Shown in pieces: positions 6,221 through 44,582 of a stretch of DNA of 64,000 nucleotides. The DNA lies in the IMG/VR virus record IMGVR_UViG_3300017991_000001, positions 62,001-126,000 of that record. The stretch is one strand, 5' to 3'. The notes under the pieces are model-generated. The model saw only the letters and a list, made by a program, of their open reading frames with translations, had not been told where the DNA came from and ran no database searches. The translations under genes were made by a program, and so were the position numbers. How positions within the stretch are numbered: position 1 is the stretch's first letter; every line of letters starts with the position of its first letter.

Positions 6221-6999
6221 AGTACACGACCGACCTGCCCCGCGAAGTGCTGATGGACCGTGCCGAGCAGACGCGGCGCCACTACGGGCCGCAGTACACG
6301 GACATCTTCTTCAAGTTCACCTGTGAGAAGTGTGGTGAGCGTTGCACGCTGGAGACGGCCAACCAGCTCCCTGAGAAGGGCGTGTGCCACAAATGCGGTC
6401 ACCATACGGAGATCGTCGAAGGCGGGTTCCTGATCGCCAAGAAGGTGCCGCACGAGAAGGGCAAGCCGCTCGTGCGGCACGTCAACATGAACCACGTGCC
6501 GCGGGTGGTGGACATCCTGGCGGGCACCTGCCCGTTCAGGGCGATCGTGGAGCGCACGGACGCCTATGAGGCCATTTCAGCTTTTGTTGATTTGATGCCT
6601 AAACTGGCTGAAGACGAGAGAGCGGGGAAGCCGTTAAAAGGACACCCACGCACTCATGATGTCATGCGCGACATGCGAGTAAGAGTTTTGATTTTGCTTT
6701 CAGAAGGAAGAAGTAAATGGCTTGCCGCCCTTCTTGTTGCTTACGGCATCGTGTTTGACGAGAGATACGGTCCTACAAATAGGGCAGCTATGCTGGATAA
6801 CTTCAATAGCATCCTGCACTACTTCCCCGTCAAGCTGTTCAACGAGGCGGAGGCGCAGGCGCGCGAGATATACGGCGACCCGGCCCACCCGATCATCCGC
6901 TGCATCAAGCAGGAGCGGTACCGGCGGGCGGGTTTCATCAAGGACTGGGAGTTCCTGCTCGACGACCAGGGCAACCAGGTCATACACGTGGATGAGTGA
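6217..6999 (+). CDS. Hypothetical protein with N-terminal Zn ribbon
   Basis: GTGA overlap; CEKC...CHKC. Confidence 0.6.
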   Translation: MKYTTDLPREVLMDRAEQTRRHYGPQYTDIFFKFTCEKCGERCTLETANQLPEKGVCHKCGHHTEIVEGGFLIAKKVPHEKGKPLVRHVNMNHVPRVVDILAGTCPFRAIVERTDAYEAISAFVDLMPKLAEDERAGKPLKGHPRTHDVMRDMRVRVLILLSEGRSKWLAALLVAYGIVFDERYGPTNRAAMLDNFNSILHYFPVKLFNEAEAQAREIYGDPAHPIIRCIKQERYRRAGFIKDWEFLLDDQGNQVIHVDE

Positions 7000-40984: not shown

Positions 40985-41292
40985 AAATCTGTGAATTCGT
41001 CGCAGAGCTGATGAGTAACAAGGACGTCCTGCTGAACGGCCACAACGTGCTGGACGAGTCGGTTACCCATACGTGCAACCTGGACGAGAAGGTGTTTGCC
41101 AAGCTCCACCCGGATCAGCAGTGGATGCTGCTCTGCGAGCTTCGGAAGCTCCTGTCCAAGTGCGACCATGCCTACGACGCGGGCCGCGTGGCGCGGGGCG
41201 AGTTGACGGAAGGCGATGTCAACCGCCTCCGCAGCGGCATGGGCGGCGTTGAGGGGAGCGACTTGAGGACGCTTAGGGGACTCGGCGGATGA
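40981..41292 (+). CDS. Hypothetical protein
   Basis: ATGA overlap. Confidence 0.5.
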   Translation: MKICEFVAELMSNKDVLLNGHNVLDESVTHTCNLDEKVFAKLHPDQQWMLLCELRKLLSKCDHAYDAGRVARGELTEGDVNRLRSGMGGVEGSDLRTLRGLGG

Positions 41293-42035
41293 AATCCGAA
41301 GAAATCAGGATCTACGCGTTGCTGTACGGTCCCCACGAGGACCTGCACCGGCGCTTGCTGGACAGCATCGCCAGGAATGTCCCTGAGGACGTGGGGCTCG
41401 ACCTGTGGCTGAACGTCGTGGGCGACGCCACCAAGTACATGGTCAGCGAGTTGGGCGGCGGCCCGCGCAGCGTGCACGTCAACACGAGCGATACAAACGT
41501 GCCGAAGTACGAGGCCATGCGCGAGATGTTCGGGCGGTTGAAGGCGGGCGCGCACCCGGAGGTCAAGTGGCTCGTCTGGTTCGACGACGACGCTCACATC
41601 GAGGGAGAGTACGGTCACTGGTGGATTCACACGACAGGGTGGATCAAGGAGCGCGAGCCCAAGAACGTCTGCTACACGGGCCAGTGCTGGTTCATTGACT
41701 GGAAGGCGGGGCAGGAGCAGTTCATCCGGGAGGCACCCTGGTACAAGGGGCTGCCGGCCAAGATGGTGGGCAACAAGCGCAAGCGGCCGGGCATCGAGTT
41801 CGCGCAGGGGTCGTACTGGTGGCTGAGGCGCGACGTCATGCAGCAGTTGGATTGGCCGGACCCGCGGCTCAAGCACAACGGCGGCGACACCATGCTCGGC
41901 GAAGCGGTTCGCCAACAGGGGTTGCCGTTCCACAAGCTGCCGTGGGACTGTTTCGGCGTGAAGACCAACGACGCACCCCGGCGCGGGCACCACGAGGCGC
42001 CGGCCGGGTGCATCGACAAGAATGCGAGGGCCTGA
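41289..42035 (+). CDS. GT-A fold (GT2-like) glycosyltransferase
   Basis: WLVWFDDDAHI (DxD), FAQGSYWWLRRD, GGDTMLG. Confidence 0.65.
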   Translation: MKSEEIRIYALLYGPHEDLHRRLLDSIARNVPEDVGLDLWLNVVGDATKYMVSELGGGPRSVHVNTSDTNVPKYEAMREMFGRLKAGAHPEVKWLVWFDDDAHIEGEYGHWWIHTTGWIKEREPKNVCYTGQCWFIDWKAGQEQFIREAPWYKGLPAKMVGNKRKRPGIEFAQGSYWWLRRDVMQQLDWPDPRLKHNGGDTMLGEAVRQQGLPFHKLPWDCFGVKTNDAPRRGHHEAPAGCIDKNARA

Positions 42036-42421
42036 TGTTAGTGGAGATGAGACTGACGGTCGAAGTGGAAAGTGCCGGTAAGAAGAAGGGCGACACGGAG
42101 GATTACATACAGCTGCACAGGCAGCTGGAGATGGAGGTCATACCTTCAAGAGGTGACATCCTTTATTCGGAGCATGATTTGGTACTCCGGGTCAAGGAGG
42201 TGCGCCACTACATAGACAGATCTCCCCCCTTGATTGAGTTGGATCTGGAGGAGGACGAAGCGCCTGTTCAACCAGATCGTCTTGATTTGGAGGCACTTCG
42301 GCAAGGGTGGATGTCTTTCATGTGGAAGCACGGGTGGGTGGTGGACCTGGACGACTCGCTTTTACCTAGAAGAGGCGACATGTGGTTACTGCTAGAGCCC
42401 TTTAAGAGAAAAGAGAGATAA
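42035..42421 (+). CDS. Hypothetical protein (AT-richer codons)
   Basis: TGATG overlap; ends 5 nt before the tmRNA. Confidence 0.45.
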   Translation: MLVEMRLTVEVESAGKKKGDTEDYIQLHRQLEMEVIPSRGDILYSEHDLVLRVKEVRHYIDRSPPLIELDLEEDEAPVQPDRLDLEALRQGWMSFMWKHGWVVDLDDSLLPRRGDMWLLLEPFKRKER

Positions 42422-42425
42422 CGCT

Positions 42426-42790
42426 GGGCCCGATTTAGATTCGACGGCGGGTACGGAGGATGTGGCAGCACGCCGCGGTTGATCGGTTGGCCGCGTTATC
42501 AAGCCGATCACACAATCAAATGCCAAGACGAAAGTCGTGGCCGGCGACTTCGGCGCAAGCCGGGTCGCCCTCGCTGCTTAACCGACAGCGGGTGAAGGTG
42601 CCCGTACTCCTGGTCCCCAGGTAAGAACGGGAAGGTCCAAAGGGGGATGGCAGCGGGGAAGACTGCTGACGGCAACCAAAGGCTGCTGACGGGGCCGCCG
42701 GGTCCTGGGAAAGACCGAACCCGGATAAGCGTGTAGAGACCCCTTCCGAAGTTCCGGCGGACTTGGGTGCAAATCCCAACGGGTCCACCA
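42426..42790 (+). ncRNA. ssrA: tmRNA (one-piece); tag ORF 42522-42581 = AKTKVVAGDFGASRVALAA*
   Basis: Acceptor GGGCCCG/CGGGTCC with G3-U70, ACCA 3' end, GATTCGAC D-loop motif, GAC plus T-arm TTGGG-TGCAAAT-CCCAA, tag ending ALAA-TAA, 365 nt. Confidence 0.95.
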
Positions 42791-42809
42791 TTTATAGGAG
42801 TGGATTTTA

Positions 42810-43262
42810 ATGCATGCAGGTGAAGCGTTGTGGACGCTGTACGCTGCGCTGGCGGCCGTTGGCCAGCGCACCCTGAAGGACCCCGGGGCGAACGCCCTGT
42901 TGACGAAGGCGGAGGAGTGCTGCGCCGTACTCGGGCAGCACATCAAGGTCGAGCCGCCCCCGATCGACCAGAAGATGCTCAGGGCGGCGGACCTGGTTGA
43001 GCGGCTGGTGCAGGCGGACGAGGCCGAAAGTAAGGCCAGTACGATTACGGATGGCGCGGCCCGCGAGGCCTTCGACCTGGCGGTCGGCATCCTGGAGGAC
43101 CTGGACGAGCTGCCCGACCGGGCGGAGGAGTTCACGGAGTCCGTGCGGGAGAAGGTTACCAGCATGCGCGACAGCATTGAGAAGTACGACAACGTGACGG
43201 CGCCGATGATGAAGGCGCTGCAGAACATGCGTGGGGGCGTCGACAGGTGGCTGAAGCGATAG
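42810..43262 (+). CDS. Hypothetical helical acidic protein
   Basis: AGGAG RBS. Confidence 0.6.
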   Translation: MHAGEALWTLYAALAAVGQRTLKDPGANALLTKAEECCAVLGQHIKVEPPPIDQKMLRAADLVERLVQADEAESKASTITDGAAREAFDLAVGILEDLDELPDRAEEFTESVREKVTSMRDSIEKYDNVTAPMMKALQNMRGGVDRWLKR

Positions 43263-43270
43263 GAGAGAAC

Positions 43271-43957
43271 ATGTCGGGTGAAGACAAGGTCCCTTCGGTC
43301 AAGGAACGCATACAGCAGAAGGCTTCGGGCGCGCACAAGACGCCCGAGGAGTTGAAGGCGGAGACGACGCAACGCATCGCCAAGGAGGTGTTCAACGTCG
43401 AATCGCCGATTACGGAGGAACGGCGGATCGCGGCGAACCTGGAACGCGACAAGCTCAAGGCCAAGCAGGCCGGCAAGCTGCAGCTGCTCAACATGAGCGG
43501 CGGCCACCTGGCCAACCTGATCGTCGGGATCTGGACGTTGATGTCGGTCACGGCGGCGGTGGTGGCCATGGTGACGTACTACTTCCTGTTGATTCACATC
43601 GAGGAGGCGCGCAAGGCTGCGCCTGTGCCGGCGAAGCAGGAGCCGGTCGTGGTCAATGTGCCTCCCATGCCGGAAACCAAACCCCCACAACTGTTCGTCT
43701 TCCTGCCTGGTAAAGAGGGCACGAAGACCATCAGGGTGGAGGGCATCAACCCGGCCACCTGGCCGGACGAGGTGCGCATCCGGCTTTCCGACATGGAGGC
43801 GCTGAAGTCGATTTTGAAGGAGCTGAAGCCCCCGGACCCTCCAAAGGCCGCCCCGCCAAAGAAGAAGGCGCGGGCGGCAAAAAGCACACAAGTCCAGAAG
43901 GGTAAGGACGGTAGCGAGTGGCTACCGCCTCCGAGGGACGTGGTTCCGCGGCAGTAG
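43271..43957 (+). CDS. Membrane protein with Pro-rich C-terminus
   Basis: AGGAG RBS; long hydrophobic segment LIVGIWTLMSVTAAVVAMVTYYFLLI. Confidence 0.6.
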   Translation: MSGEDKVPSVKERIQQKASGAHKTPEELKAETTQRIAKEVFNVESPITEERRIAANLERDKLKAKQAGKLQLLNMSGGHLANLIVGIWTLMSVTAAVVAMVTYYFLLIHIEEARKAAPVPAKQEPVVVNVPPMPETKPPQLFVFLPGKEGTKTIRVEGINPATWPDEVRIRLSDMEALKSILKELKPPDPPKAAPPKKKARAAKSTQVQKGKDGSEWLPPPRDVVPRQ

Positions 43958-43995
43958 GCTTCACATAACCCACAACATGCAGTACACTTCGGGAC

Positions 43996-44244
43996 ATGGA
44001 CATCGAGATACAGTACTGCGAGTTGTGAGGGGGTCGAGAACACGCCGACCGTGTTGTCGGTGAGATCCGCCGGTACCTGTCGCTGCCCACGAGCATCCTT
44101 GACGTGGGCAAGGGCAAGTTCGAGGTGCTGGTCAATGGCAAGACCATCTTTTCAAAGCAGAAGGCAGGACGGTTTCCGCGTCCCGGCGAGATCGCCAAGA
44201 TCTGTCGGGACACGTTCCGAAATCCGATGCAGGCATCGAAATGA
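43996..44244 (+). CDS. Rdx/SelW-SelT-SelH family selenoprotein (CxxU), 82 aa, UGA at 44026-44028 read as Sec
   Basis: MDIEIQYCELUGGREH...GKFEVLVNGKTIFSKQKAGRFPRPGEI; family motifs on both sides of the in-frame TGA; true stop overlaps the next ATG (ATGA). Confidence 0.85.
44041..44064 (+). promoter_or_regulatory. Bacterial SECIS-like hairpin
   Basis: GCCGAC-CGTGTT-GTCGGT; loop starts 21 nt after UGA with G-U at loop positions 2-3. Confidence 0.6.
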
Positions 44245-44582
44245 GCATGTCGAAGCCCAACTGGAGCGACCTGAAGCGCCGCCGGCGCATGGGTCGCGCG
44301 CAGCGCTGGAAGTCCGCCGTGAAGCACGTACCGCGGCTGACCGCCTTCTGCGCCGAGCACGGCGTGGAAATGAGATCCGTGGATGGGGGGTATCAGTTCC
44401 GGTTCATGGAGTACGTGATCATCTGGTTCCCGGCGACCAACAAGGTGCTGGTCCAATACCAGTTGCCGGGGCATGAGACCGTTCGATTTGAAGAGAACGG
44501 ACAACACAACAAGCCACGTGTACTAGTGGCACTGGAGGAGATGGTTGACCTCACGAGGCCTAAATGCGTATCGCACGGTTAG
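44241..44582 (+). CDS. Hypothetical protein
   Basis: ATGA overlap with the selenoprotein stop. Confidence 0.6.
   Translation: MSMSKPNWSDLKRRRRMGRAQRWKSAVKHVPRLTAFCAEHGVEMRSVDGGYQFRFMEYVIIWFPATNKVLVQYQLPGHETVRFEENGQHNKPRVLVALEEMVDLTRPKCVSHG

What the first reader, a model, noticed from the sequence alone, without database searches (positions are those of the whole stretch)
42426..42790. Complete phage-encoded tmRNA with a long 19-codon tag and atypical T-loop
Seen: G3-U70 acceptor stem, encoded CCA, a resume context ATCAAAT-GCC, tag AKTKVVAGDFGASRVALAA*, and T-loop TGCAAAT instead of TTCRANT. Known: tmRNA rescues stalled ribosomes, and C-terminal ALAA is the ClpXP/ClpAP degron; some phages carry ssrA. 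Inferred: the phage supplies its own ribosome rescue, perhaps replacing host tmRNA cut by defence nucleases. It lies 1.2 kb from the UGA-recoded gene. No smpB was seen in the window. The tag may help identify the host.
Basis: partly seen in the sequence, partly recalled or inferred. Interest (0 to 1): 0.6.

Follow-up and report, generated by a model that had tools for sequence, protein, structure and literature searches.

The report
Jumbo phage carries its own tmRNA
A 211-kb sediment phage carries a complete, apparently functional copy of the bacterial ribosome-rescue RNA (tmRNA) but not its protein partner SmpB; this is a real but already familiar kind of phage accessory gene, and its odd-looking T-loop is a normal, compensated variant.

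Summary
ARAGORN and Rfam RF00023 (93.6 bits against a cut-off of 47, whole model) both place a one-piece tmRNA at window 42426-42790 (+), with the tag AKTKVVAGDFGASRVALAA.

The window lies in a complete 211,084-bp phage genome. It has a large terminase, baseplate J, DNA polymerase A and a fused giant RNA polymerase. It has no integrase and no SmpB.

The "atypical" T-loop (G in place of U55) is not a defect:
- Among tmRNAs collected with G55, the D-loop partner dinucleotide is AG in 115 of 138.
- Among those collected with U55, it is GG in 56 of 61.
- The phage has AG plus G55, the class already reported for the Caulobacter tmRNA.

The gene sits in a 2.2-kb variable island that a collinear sister phage lacks. 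The island also holds an Rdx/SelW-like gene with a Cys-x-x-UGA motif. Apart from the tmRNA, the genome's only tRNA-type gene (ARAGORN and Rfam) is an amber-suppressor tRNA(CUA).

Identical sequence recurs in independent assemblies. One divergent contig shows a compensatory A-U to G-C change in a hairpin.

Best reading: an acquired, functional tmRNA that works with the host's SmpB, AlaRS and EF-Tu. Host, expression and benefit remain untested. It is a new member of a known kind, of modest interest.

The parts
42426..42790 (+). One-piece tmRNA (ssrA) gene, 365 nt, with encoded CCA
   Evidence: ARAGORN; Rfam RF00023 at 93.6 bits, model 1-374
42426..42432 (+). 5' strand of the acceptor stem. It pairs with 42780-42786, and G3 pairs with U (the G3-U70 equivalent). 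Discriminator A is at 42787 and CCA at 42788-42790.
   Evidence: Seven pairs verified
42433..42445 (+). D-loop analogue AUUUAGAUUCGAC. The usual GG is AG, with A at 42437 as the G18 equivalent.
   Evidence: Rfam alignment; covariation counts
42474..42510 (+). Pseudoknot PK1: stem 1 is 42474-42478/42491-42495 and stem 2 is 42480-42486/42504-42510
   Evidence: All 12 pairs are Watson-Crick. The two SNPs seen in run X5 (42497, 42513) fall in unpaired positions.
42522..42581 (+). Tag reading frame: resume codon GCC at 42522-42524, 19 codons (AKTKVVAGDFGASRVALAA), stop UAA at 42579-42581
   Evidence: ARAGORN; the stop lies in the loop of helix 5 (42572-42576/42586-42590); the mRNA-like region folds with z = -4.2
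42599..42725 (+). Pseudoknot domain (PK2-PK4 region), including hairpins 42651-42656/42663-42668 and 42670-42674/42684-42688
   Evidence: Poorly aligned to the Rfam model, but the hairpins are verified. A divergent contig in run X7 changes A-U to G-C at 42674/42684 and creates an extra A-U pair at 42675/42683.
42763..42779 (+). T-arm: stem UUGGG/CCCAA and loop UGCAAAU (42768-42774), with G at 42769 in place of U55
   Evidence: the same letters occur in the independent contig L010
42047..42421 (+). ORFan of 124 aa ending 4 nt before the tmRNA. Its GC3 is 0.62, against about 0.85-0.9 in neighbouring genes.
   Evidence: No Pfam or PHROG hit. No homologue other than itself among 5.8 billion proteins. 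The AlphaFold2 model was unusable, pLDDT 38.9.
42810..43262 (+). 150-aa ORF of unknown function. It starts 19 nt after the CCA and is preceded by GGAG.
   Evidence: no significant family hit
43996..44244 (+). Rdx/SelW-like ORF with an in-frame TGA at 44026-44028 in a Cys-Glu-Leu-TGA motif (candidate selenocysteine codon). It lies in the same variable island.
   Evidence: Pfam PF10262: 44 bits read with TGA=U, and 29.4 bits for the part after the TGA without any recoding. Sequence. Absent from the sister phage.
42036..44240 (+). Variable island of 2.2 kb that holds the tmRNA. It lies between genes conserved in the sister phage G001, where the same gap is about 1.09 kb and has no tmRNA.
   Evidence: tblastn synteny: 41289-42035 matches G001 180447-179737 at 47% identity; 44241-44582 matches G001 178647-178414 at 38% identity. 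No tmRNA in G001.

Best explanation
This is a functional tmRNA that a virulent jumbo phage acquired by horizontal transfer and now carries as an accessory gene.

Inferred mechanism, by analogy with bacterial trans-translation:
1. The RNA is transcribed with its co-oriented neighbours and trimmed by host RNase P and host 3' nucleases.
2. Host SmpB binds it; the phage has no smpB of its own.
3. Host AlaRS charges it with alanine through the G3-U pair and the discriminator A. EF-Tu delivers it to ribosomes stalled at the 3' ends of broken messages.
4. Translation resumes on its GCC codon and adds AKTKVVAGDFGASRVALAA. The ...ALAA end directs the product to the host's ClpXP-type proteases.

The likely benefit is to keep ribosomes free during infection, when host mRNA is being degraded and non-stop messages accumulate.

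What is shown: the gene's presence, its completeness, its structure, its phage context, and its absence from the sister phage. What is inferred: expression, charging, dependence on host SmpB, tagging and the benefit.
For: - Family match: RF00023 at 93.6 bits against a cut-off of 47, over the whole model; ARAGORN agrees.
- All canonical elements are intact: acceptor stem with G3-U, A73, CCA, T-arm, PK1, resume codon, and stop codon in the helix 5 loop.
- The one departure from consensus, G at U55, is matched by A at the G18 equivalent. This is the pairing rule seen across collected tmRNAs: AG in 115 of 138 with G55, GG in 56 of 61 with U55. It is reported for the Caulobacter tmRNA (PMC1168896).
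- Phage context: large terminase, DNA polymerase A, baseplate J and RNA polymerase; terminal repeats and 100% estimated completeness; no integrase.
- The same gene with the same flanks occurs in an independent IMG/VR contig and in Logan contigs of several runs.
- Variation respects the structure. Two SNPs fall in unpaired positions. A divergent contig has a compensatory A-U to G-C change and a mismatch-to-pair change in one hairpin.
- Phage tmRNAs are an established class: about 2.3% of 18,146 phage genomes (PMC9004378), and huge phages (PMC7162821).
Against: - There is no expression evidence. No RNA run holds the sequence, and no sigma-70-type promoter or intrinsic terminator lies nearby.
- There is no SmpB in the phage, so function depends on compatibility with an unknown host.
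- The collinear sister phage lacks the gene, so it is dispensable for this phage lineage.
- The near-identity across samples reflects one phage population and says little about selection.
- The compensatory change rests on a single 111-nt contig of low depth (2.6).
- PK2-PK4 align poorly to the family model.
Confidence: 0.7

Rival explanations
1. The gene is a recently captured passenger. It arrived with the variable island and is neutral or not used by the phage, either because it is not expressed or because it is incompatible with the host's SmpB.
For: - It is absent from the collinear sister phage and lies in a 2.2-kb island with ORFan genes, one of them of atypical composition (GC3 0.62).
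- There is no smpB, no recognisable promoter and no RNA data.
Against: - Every functional element is intact, and the D-loop/T-loop pair is of the compensated type.
- The few variants seen avoid or preserve pairs.
- A 365-nt RNA gene with four pseudoknot regions would decay quickly if unused.
Confidence: 0.15
2. The tmRNA exists to cope with the phage's own manipulation of stop codons. The amber-suppressor tRNA(CUA), and perhaps the UGA-containing Rdx gene, cause read-through or stalling. Ribosomes then run to message ends and need extra rescue capacity.
For: - The tmRNA and the tRNA(CUA) (genome 35107-35179, Rfam 61.1 bits) are the only tRNA-type genes found by ARAGORN on the whole genome and by Rfam on 97% of it; Rfam did not cover genome 59001-62000 and 199001-211084.
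- Suppressor tRNAs are reported to raise the load on trans-translation (Ueda et al. 2002, as cited in PMC3985003).
- The Rdx Cys-x-x-UGA gene lies 1.2 kb away in the same island.
Against: - The sister phage also has a tRNA(CUA) but no tmRNA.
- Among 239 viral loci taken around tmRNA-type 3' ends, only 1 of 196 nearby tRNAs is a suppressor.
- There is no sign of genome-wide TAG recoding.
- The tRNA lies 69 kb from the tmRNA.
Confidence: 0.1
3. The gene is an attachment site, or a remnant of one: a copy of host ssrA kept because the phage integrates into the host tmRNA gene, or picked up by imprecise excision.
For: tmRNA genes are common integration sites, and fragments of ssrA are known in prophages (discussed in PMC9004378).
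Against: - The whole gene is present, not just a 3' piece.
- There is no tyrosine or serine recombinase in the genome.
- The genome has terminal repeats and is complete.
- A degenerate 32-nt pattern of its 3' end matched only three unrelated genomes among 185,579 species.
- The gene lies mid-genome between co-oriented phage genes.
Confidence: 0.03

Closest known systems
Bacterial one-piece tmRNA (SsrA, Rfam RF00023), e.g. Escherichia coli
   Same: It has the same architecture: a tRNA-like domain with G3-U70, A73 and CCA; PK1; a resume codon for alanine; a short ORF ending in ALAA; a stop codon in the helix 5 loop; a pseudoknot domain; and a length of about 365 nt.
   Different: - It is carried by a phage, with no adjacent or genomic smpB.
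- The tag starts with AK rather than the common AN (6 against 192 of 249 in my sample) and has 19 residues against a median of 10.
- The D-loop has AG and the T-loop has G55, instead of GG and U55.
Phage-encoded tmRNAs: Melnitz and pelagimyophages (PMC9004378), Sphingobium phage Lacusarx (PMC5648845), Sinorhizobium jumbo phage AP-J-162 (PMC11242549), huge phages (PMC7162821)
   Same: A complete ssrA carried by a lytic or large phage as an accessory translation gene, commonly without proof of function.
   Different: - There is no sequence similarity to any tmRNA in 50,697 deposited phage genomes.
- It is one-piece, unlike the marine two-piece ones.
- Some huge phages also carry SmpB (PMC7162821); this one does not.
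- There is no accompanying tRNA array, only a suppressor tRNA.
tmRNAs with G at the U342/U55-equivalent position, as reported for Caulobacter crescentus (PMC1168896) and seen here mostly in two-piece tmRNAs
   Same: G55 in the T-loop together with AG in the D-loop analogue.
   Different: - Of 163 such tmRNAs collected, 144 are permuted two-piece genes and only 19 are one-piece. The phage gene is one-piece.
- It shares only the 3' 32 nt or so with them by blastn.
tmRNAs of two other viral contigs (L317 and L433) with the tag AKKVVHGHFGAHAMAA
   Same: The tag core is similar (AK-KVV-G-FGA...AA) and the coding letters are similar. The resume codon is likewise sequestered in a hairpin with the Val-Val codons. 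All are about 60% G+C with a phage context.
   Different: - Overall identity is only 61%, no better than to unrelated tmRNAs.
- Those two have the canonical GG/U55 pair.
- The phages themselves are not related.

Membership tests
tmRNA (SsrA; Rfam RF00023) | Covariance-model score above the curated threshold over the full model | tested here: met
   93.6 bits against 47, model 1-374 of 374, not truncated
tmRNA (SsrA; Rfam RF00023) | tRNA-like domain: 7-bp acceptor stem with the G3-U70 alanine identity pair, discriminator A, 3' CCA | tested here: met
   Pairs verified; G3-U359, A362 and CCA 363-365 are all encoded
tmRNA (SsrA; Rfam RF00023) | T-arm with a conserved T-loop that contacts the stem-less D-loop | tested here: met
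   The loop is UGCAAAU (G for U55) and the D-loop has AG for GG. This combination is the rule among G55 tmRNAs (115 of 138) and was absent from the U55 controls (0 of 61). It is a variant of the feature, not a failure of it.
tmRNA (SsrA; Rfam RF00023) | Pseudoknot PK1 just upstream of the resume codon | tested here: met
   Two interleaved perfect stems of 5 and 7 bp, ending 11 nt before GCC
tmRNA (SsrA; Rfam RF00023) | Short ORF that starts at an alanine resume codon and ends in a hydrophobic degron (…LAA), with the stop codon in the helix 5 loop | tested here: met
   GCC, 19 codons...VALAA, UAA in the loop of 147-151/161-165. 176 of 249 sampled tags end in LAA.
tmRNA (SsrA; Rfam RF00023) | Works with SmpB | not testable with these tools
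   No SmpB (PF01668) in any frame of the phage genome at E <= 1. The host is unknown, so binding cannot be assessed.
tmRNA (SsrA; Rfam RF00023) | Is expressed, charged with alanine, and tags stalled peptides | not testable with these tools
   No RNA run holds the sequence. Only contigs of DNA runs could be laid on it.
Prophage att site / ssrA fragment | A partial 3' ssrA copy identical to the host gene, with a site-specific recombinase | tested here: not met
   The gene is full-length, there is no integrase or resolvase, and there is no matching host 3' end

The most novel reading that the evidence does not exclude
The tmRNA is one part of a deliberate package for altering stop-codon decoding. 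The phage suppresses UAG with its own tRNA(CUA). It decodes a UGA in its Rdx/SelW-like gene, which lies in the same 2.2-kb island as the tmRNA. It supplies extra tmRNA to clear the ribosomes that read through or stall as a result. A phage-specific tag may keep this traffic separate from host quality control.
Probability: 0.1. Interest if true: 0.55.

Novelty: new member of a known kind. Interest (0 to 1): 0.3.

Why it matters
Phage-borne tmRNAs are known from sequence, but none of the papers read here reports a test of one's function, so what they do for a phage remains open. This example is a clean case for testing that question:
- It comes from a complete jumbo-phage genome with its own RNA polymerase and no SmpB.
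- It has a collinear sister phage that naturally lacks the gene.
- Its only translation-RNA companion is an amber suppressor.

The AG/G55 pairing rule measured here also gives annotators a simple check, so that such T-loops are not flagged as defective. It hints that the host's SmpB and tmRNA are of the same type. None of this changes what is known about trans-translation.

Tried and rejected
- **blastn of the tmRNA against 50,697 deposited phages:** no match.
- **Exact T-arm pattern in IMG/VR:** 41 loci, but only the identical contig is a tmRNA.
- **Degenerate 3'-end pattern in 185,579 species genomes:** three unrelated hits, an alphaproteobacterial MAG and two Christensenella MAGs, so no host clue.
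- **Pattern search in 401 genomes of one phylum:** 11 had the G55 T-arm, but no names are given, so no taxonomy was gained.
- **Large terminase and DNA polymerase against cultured phages:** identity of 28% or less, so no host inference.
- **Flanking ORFs:**
  - No Pfam or PHROG family.
  - The upstream 124-aa ORF has no homologue.
  - Its single-sequence AlphaFold2 model was unusable, pLDDT 38.9. I therefore could not test whether it is an SmpB-like fold, and no fold search was run.
- **Promoter and terminator scan:** nothing found.
- **RNA evidence:** no RNA runs.
- **Genome-wide TAG recoding:** no enrichment of coding-like extensions after TAG.
- **Local co-occurrence of suppressor tRNAs with viral tmRNAs:** 1 of 196 tRNAs.
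- **Reading ORF 43247-43957 through its stop codon:**
  - The stop is TAG, and the downstream frame is not coding-like.
  - The real UGA gene is the Rdx ORF in another frame.
- **Tag-alike tmRNAs (L317, L433):** overall identity no better than background, so common ancestry is unproven.

Full report

Yes. ARAGORN finds one tmRNA in the window, at 42426-42790 on the + strand, with the tag AKTKVVAGDFGASRVALAA*. Rfam's tmRNA model RF00023 matches the same coordinates end to end (model 1-374 of 374) at 93.6 bits against a gathering score of 47, E 3.7e-35.

I checked the key helices on the sequence:
- The acceptor stem has seven pairs, with G3 paired to U. It is followed by discriminator A and an encoded CCA.
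- The T-stem is UUGGG/CCCAA with loop UGCAAAU.
- PK1 has two interleaved perfect stems (49-53/66-70 and 55-61/79-85).
- The resume codon GCC is at gene positions 97-99.
- The stop codon UAA lies in the loop of helix 5.

PK2 to PK4 align poorly to the model, but they contain verifiable hairpins.

**2. Where is it?**

The window is bases 62001-126000 of a 211,084-bp IMG/VR virus record. That record has direct terminal repeats, 62.7% G+C and an estimated completeness of 100%.

The genome encodes:
- a gpA-type large terminase;
- a DNA polymerase A fused to a uracil-DNA-glycosylase-like domain;
- an SbcCD-like pair;
- a baseplate J protein;
- a 2,358-residue fused RNA polymerase beta/beta' with an intein.

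It has no close cultured relative; the large terminase is at most 28% identical to any. It has no tyrosine or serine recombinase and no SmpB in any frame.

Apart from the tmRNA, the only tRNA-type gene found is a tRNA with anticodon CUA at genome 35107-35179, which is outside the window (Rfam tRNA at 61.1 bits). ARAGORN covered the whole genome. Rfam covered the window and loci L002-L008, leaving genome 59001-62000 and 199001-211084 unscanned. All three stop codons are used, and there is no sign of genome-wide TAG recoding.

**3. Is it an artefact or a host fragment?**

No.
- An independently listed contig (IMGVR_UViG_3300017960_000018) carries the identical 601 bases.
- The stretch is held by nine sequencing runs from eight studies of sediment, seawater and wetland.
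- Logan contigs from four of these runs join the tmRNA to both flanks.
- The gene is whole, not a 3' piece.
- A degenerate pattern of its 3' end found only three unrelated genomes among 185,579 species.

**4. The "atypical" T-loop.**

The loop has G where tRNAs and most tmRNAs have U55. The Rfam alignment also shows that the D-loop analogue reads AG where the consensus reads GG. The first G is the equivalent of G18, which contacts position 55 in tRNA-like elbows. That contact is established tRNA knowledge, and D-loop/T-loop contact in tmRNA is cited in PMC3968760.

I collected tmRNA 3' ends carrying G55 from metagenome and viral contigs.
- ARAGORN called 163 tmRNAs among them. The D-loop dinucleotide is AG in 115 of 138 that could be parsed, and GG in 5.
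- In a control set with U55, it is GG in 56 of 61 and never AG.

These sequences are related to one another, so the counts are not independent events, but the rule is clear. The phage has AG plus G55. The same G has been reported for the Caulobacter tmRNA (PMC1168896). The T-loop is therefore a compensated natural variant, not a warning sign.

Most G55 tmRNAs collected are two-piece (144 of 163). The phage's is one of the rarer one-piece kind.

**5. Origin.**

A collinear sister jumbo phage (IMGVR_UViG_3300017987_000001) is 207,857 bp long. Its large terminase is 48% identical and its RNA polymerase 60% identical to those of this phage. It carries 38 tRNAs, including a tRNA(CUA), but no tmRNA.

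The genes on either side are conserved: window 41289-42035 at 47% identity and 44241-44582 at 38% identity. The 2.2 kb between them is replaced by about 1.09 kb in the sister phage. That island holds:
- a 124-residue ORFan of atypical composition, ending 4 nt before the tmRNA;
- the tmRNA;
- two ORFs of unknown function;
- an Rdx/SelW-like gene with a Cys-Glu-Leu-TGA motif.

Pfam PF10262 scores 29.4 bits for the part after the TGA with no recoding, and 44 bits for the whole ORF with TGA read as selenocysteine.

The tmRNA is thus a lineage-specific acquisition. No close relative of it was found. blastn shows only the 3' 32 nt or so shared with other tmRNAs.

Two other viral contigs have a strikingly similar tag (AKKVVHGHFGAHAMAA) and a similar hairpin around the resume codon. 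Their overall identity of 61% is no better than background, and the phages are unrelated.

**6. Evidence bearing on function.**

All parts needed for processing, alanylation and tagging are intact.

Variation is sparse, because the samples hold essentially one phage population. What variation exists respects the structure:
- Two SNPs in run X5 fall in a PK1 loop and in the single-stranded stretch before the resume codon.
- A 111-nt divergent contig in run X7 turns an A-U pair into G-C (gene positions 249/259). It converts an A/C mismatch into A-U (250/258), and turns one G-C into G-U, all in the hairpin 245-263. That contig has low depth, so this is modest support.

No RNA run holds the sequence. 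No sigma-70 promoter or intrinsic terminator was found. That absence is not surprising for a phage with its own RNA polymerase. The next gene begins 19 nt after the CCA, so the tmRNA is probably cut out of a longer transcript.

**7. Mechanism and rivals.**

The best-supported reading is a working tmRNA that relies on host SmpB, AlaRS and EF-Tu, keeping ribosomes available during infection (confidence 0.7).

The rivals are:
- A neutral passenger (0.15).
- A link to the phage's amber suppressor, for which suppressor-induced read-through is a reported load on trans-translation (Ueda et al. 2002, via PMC3985003). This is weakened because the sister phage has the suppressor without the tmRNA, and because only 1 of 196 tRNAs near viral tmRNAs is a suppressor (0.1).
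- An att-site remnant (0.03).

**8. Novelty.**

Phage tmRNAs are documented in about 2.3% of phage genomes (PMC9004378), in huge phages (PMC7162821), and in phages of alphaproteobacteria (PMC5648845, PMC11242549). This is a new, sequence-divergent member of that known kind. The host was not identified.

Noticed in passing
window 43996-44244 (+), TGA at 44026-44028: An Rdx/SelW-like ORF with a Cys-Glu-Leu-TGA motif, a candidate phage-encoded selenoprotein. Pfam PF10262 scores 44 bits with TGA=U, and 29.4 bits for the C-terminal part alone. It is absent from the sister phage. No tRNA-Sec gene was called by ARAGORN; other selenocysteine-machinery genes were not searched for. A hairpin-prone stretch follows the TGA, but no SECIS was tested.
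   Followed up: partly
genome 35107-35179 (+), outside the window (L003:15107-15179): An amber-suppressor tRNA (anticodon CUA; Rfam tRNA at 61.1 bits). It is the only tRNA found, in a phage that ends about a quarter of its genes with TAG. The sister phage also has a tRNA(CUA), about 65% identical, plus 37 ordinary tRNAs.
   Followed up: partly
genome 131428-138504 (+), outside the window (L005:6428-13504): A single 2,358-residue ORF joins SET-like, LNS2-like and 2H-phosphoesterase domains to RNA polymerase beta (interrupted by an intein with a LAGLIDADG domain) and to beta' domains. It is 60% identical over 860 residues in the sister phage.
   Followed up: no
window 42047-42421 (+): A 124-residue ORFan that ends 4 nt before the tmRNA. 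Its GC3 is 0.62, against 0.85-0.9 for its neighbours. It has no homologue among 5.8 billion proteins, and its AlphaFold2 model is of low confidence.
   Followed up: yes
L072:870-956 and L073 about 6725-6809; G005:C8:24877-24956: Christensenella MAGs carry a gene of about 80 nt that is only the tRNA-like domain of a tmRNA: acceptor stem, D-loop analogue, short helix, T-arm and CCA. It scores 69.4 bits with RF00023 and sits inside a tRNA cluster. The same genome also has a normal full-length tmRNA elsewhere (105.9 bits).
   Followed up: no
L317:2723-3006 and L433:181-547 (-): Two unrelated viral contigs of about 60% G+C carry tmRNAs with the tag AKKVVHGHFGAHAMAA, similar to this phage's tag. L317's copy has an internal deletion of about 83 nt in the pseudoknot domain relative to L433's.
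   Followed up: partly
L074-L313 (metagenome and viral loci): tmRNAs with G at the U55 position almost always have AG instead of GG in the D-loop analogue (115 of 138, against 0 of 61 in the U55 controls). Most are two-piece genes.
   Followed up: yes
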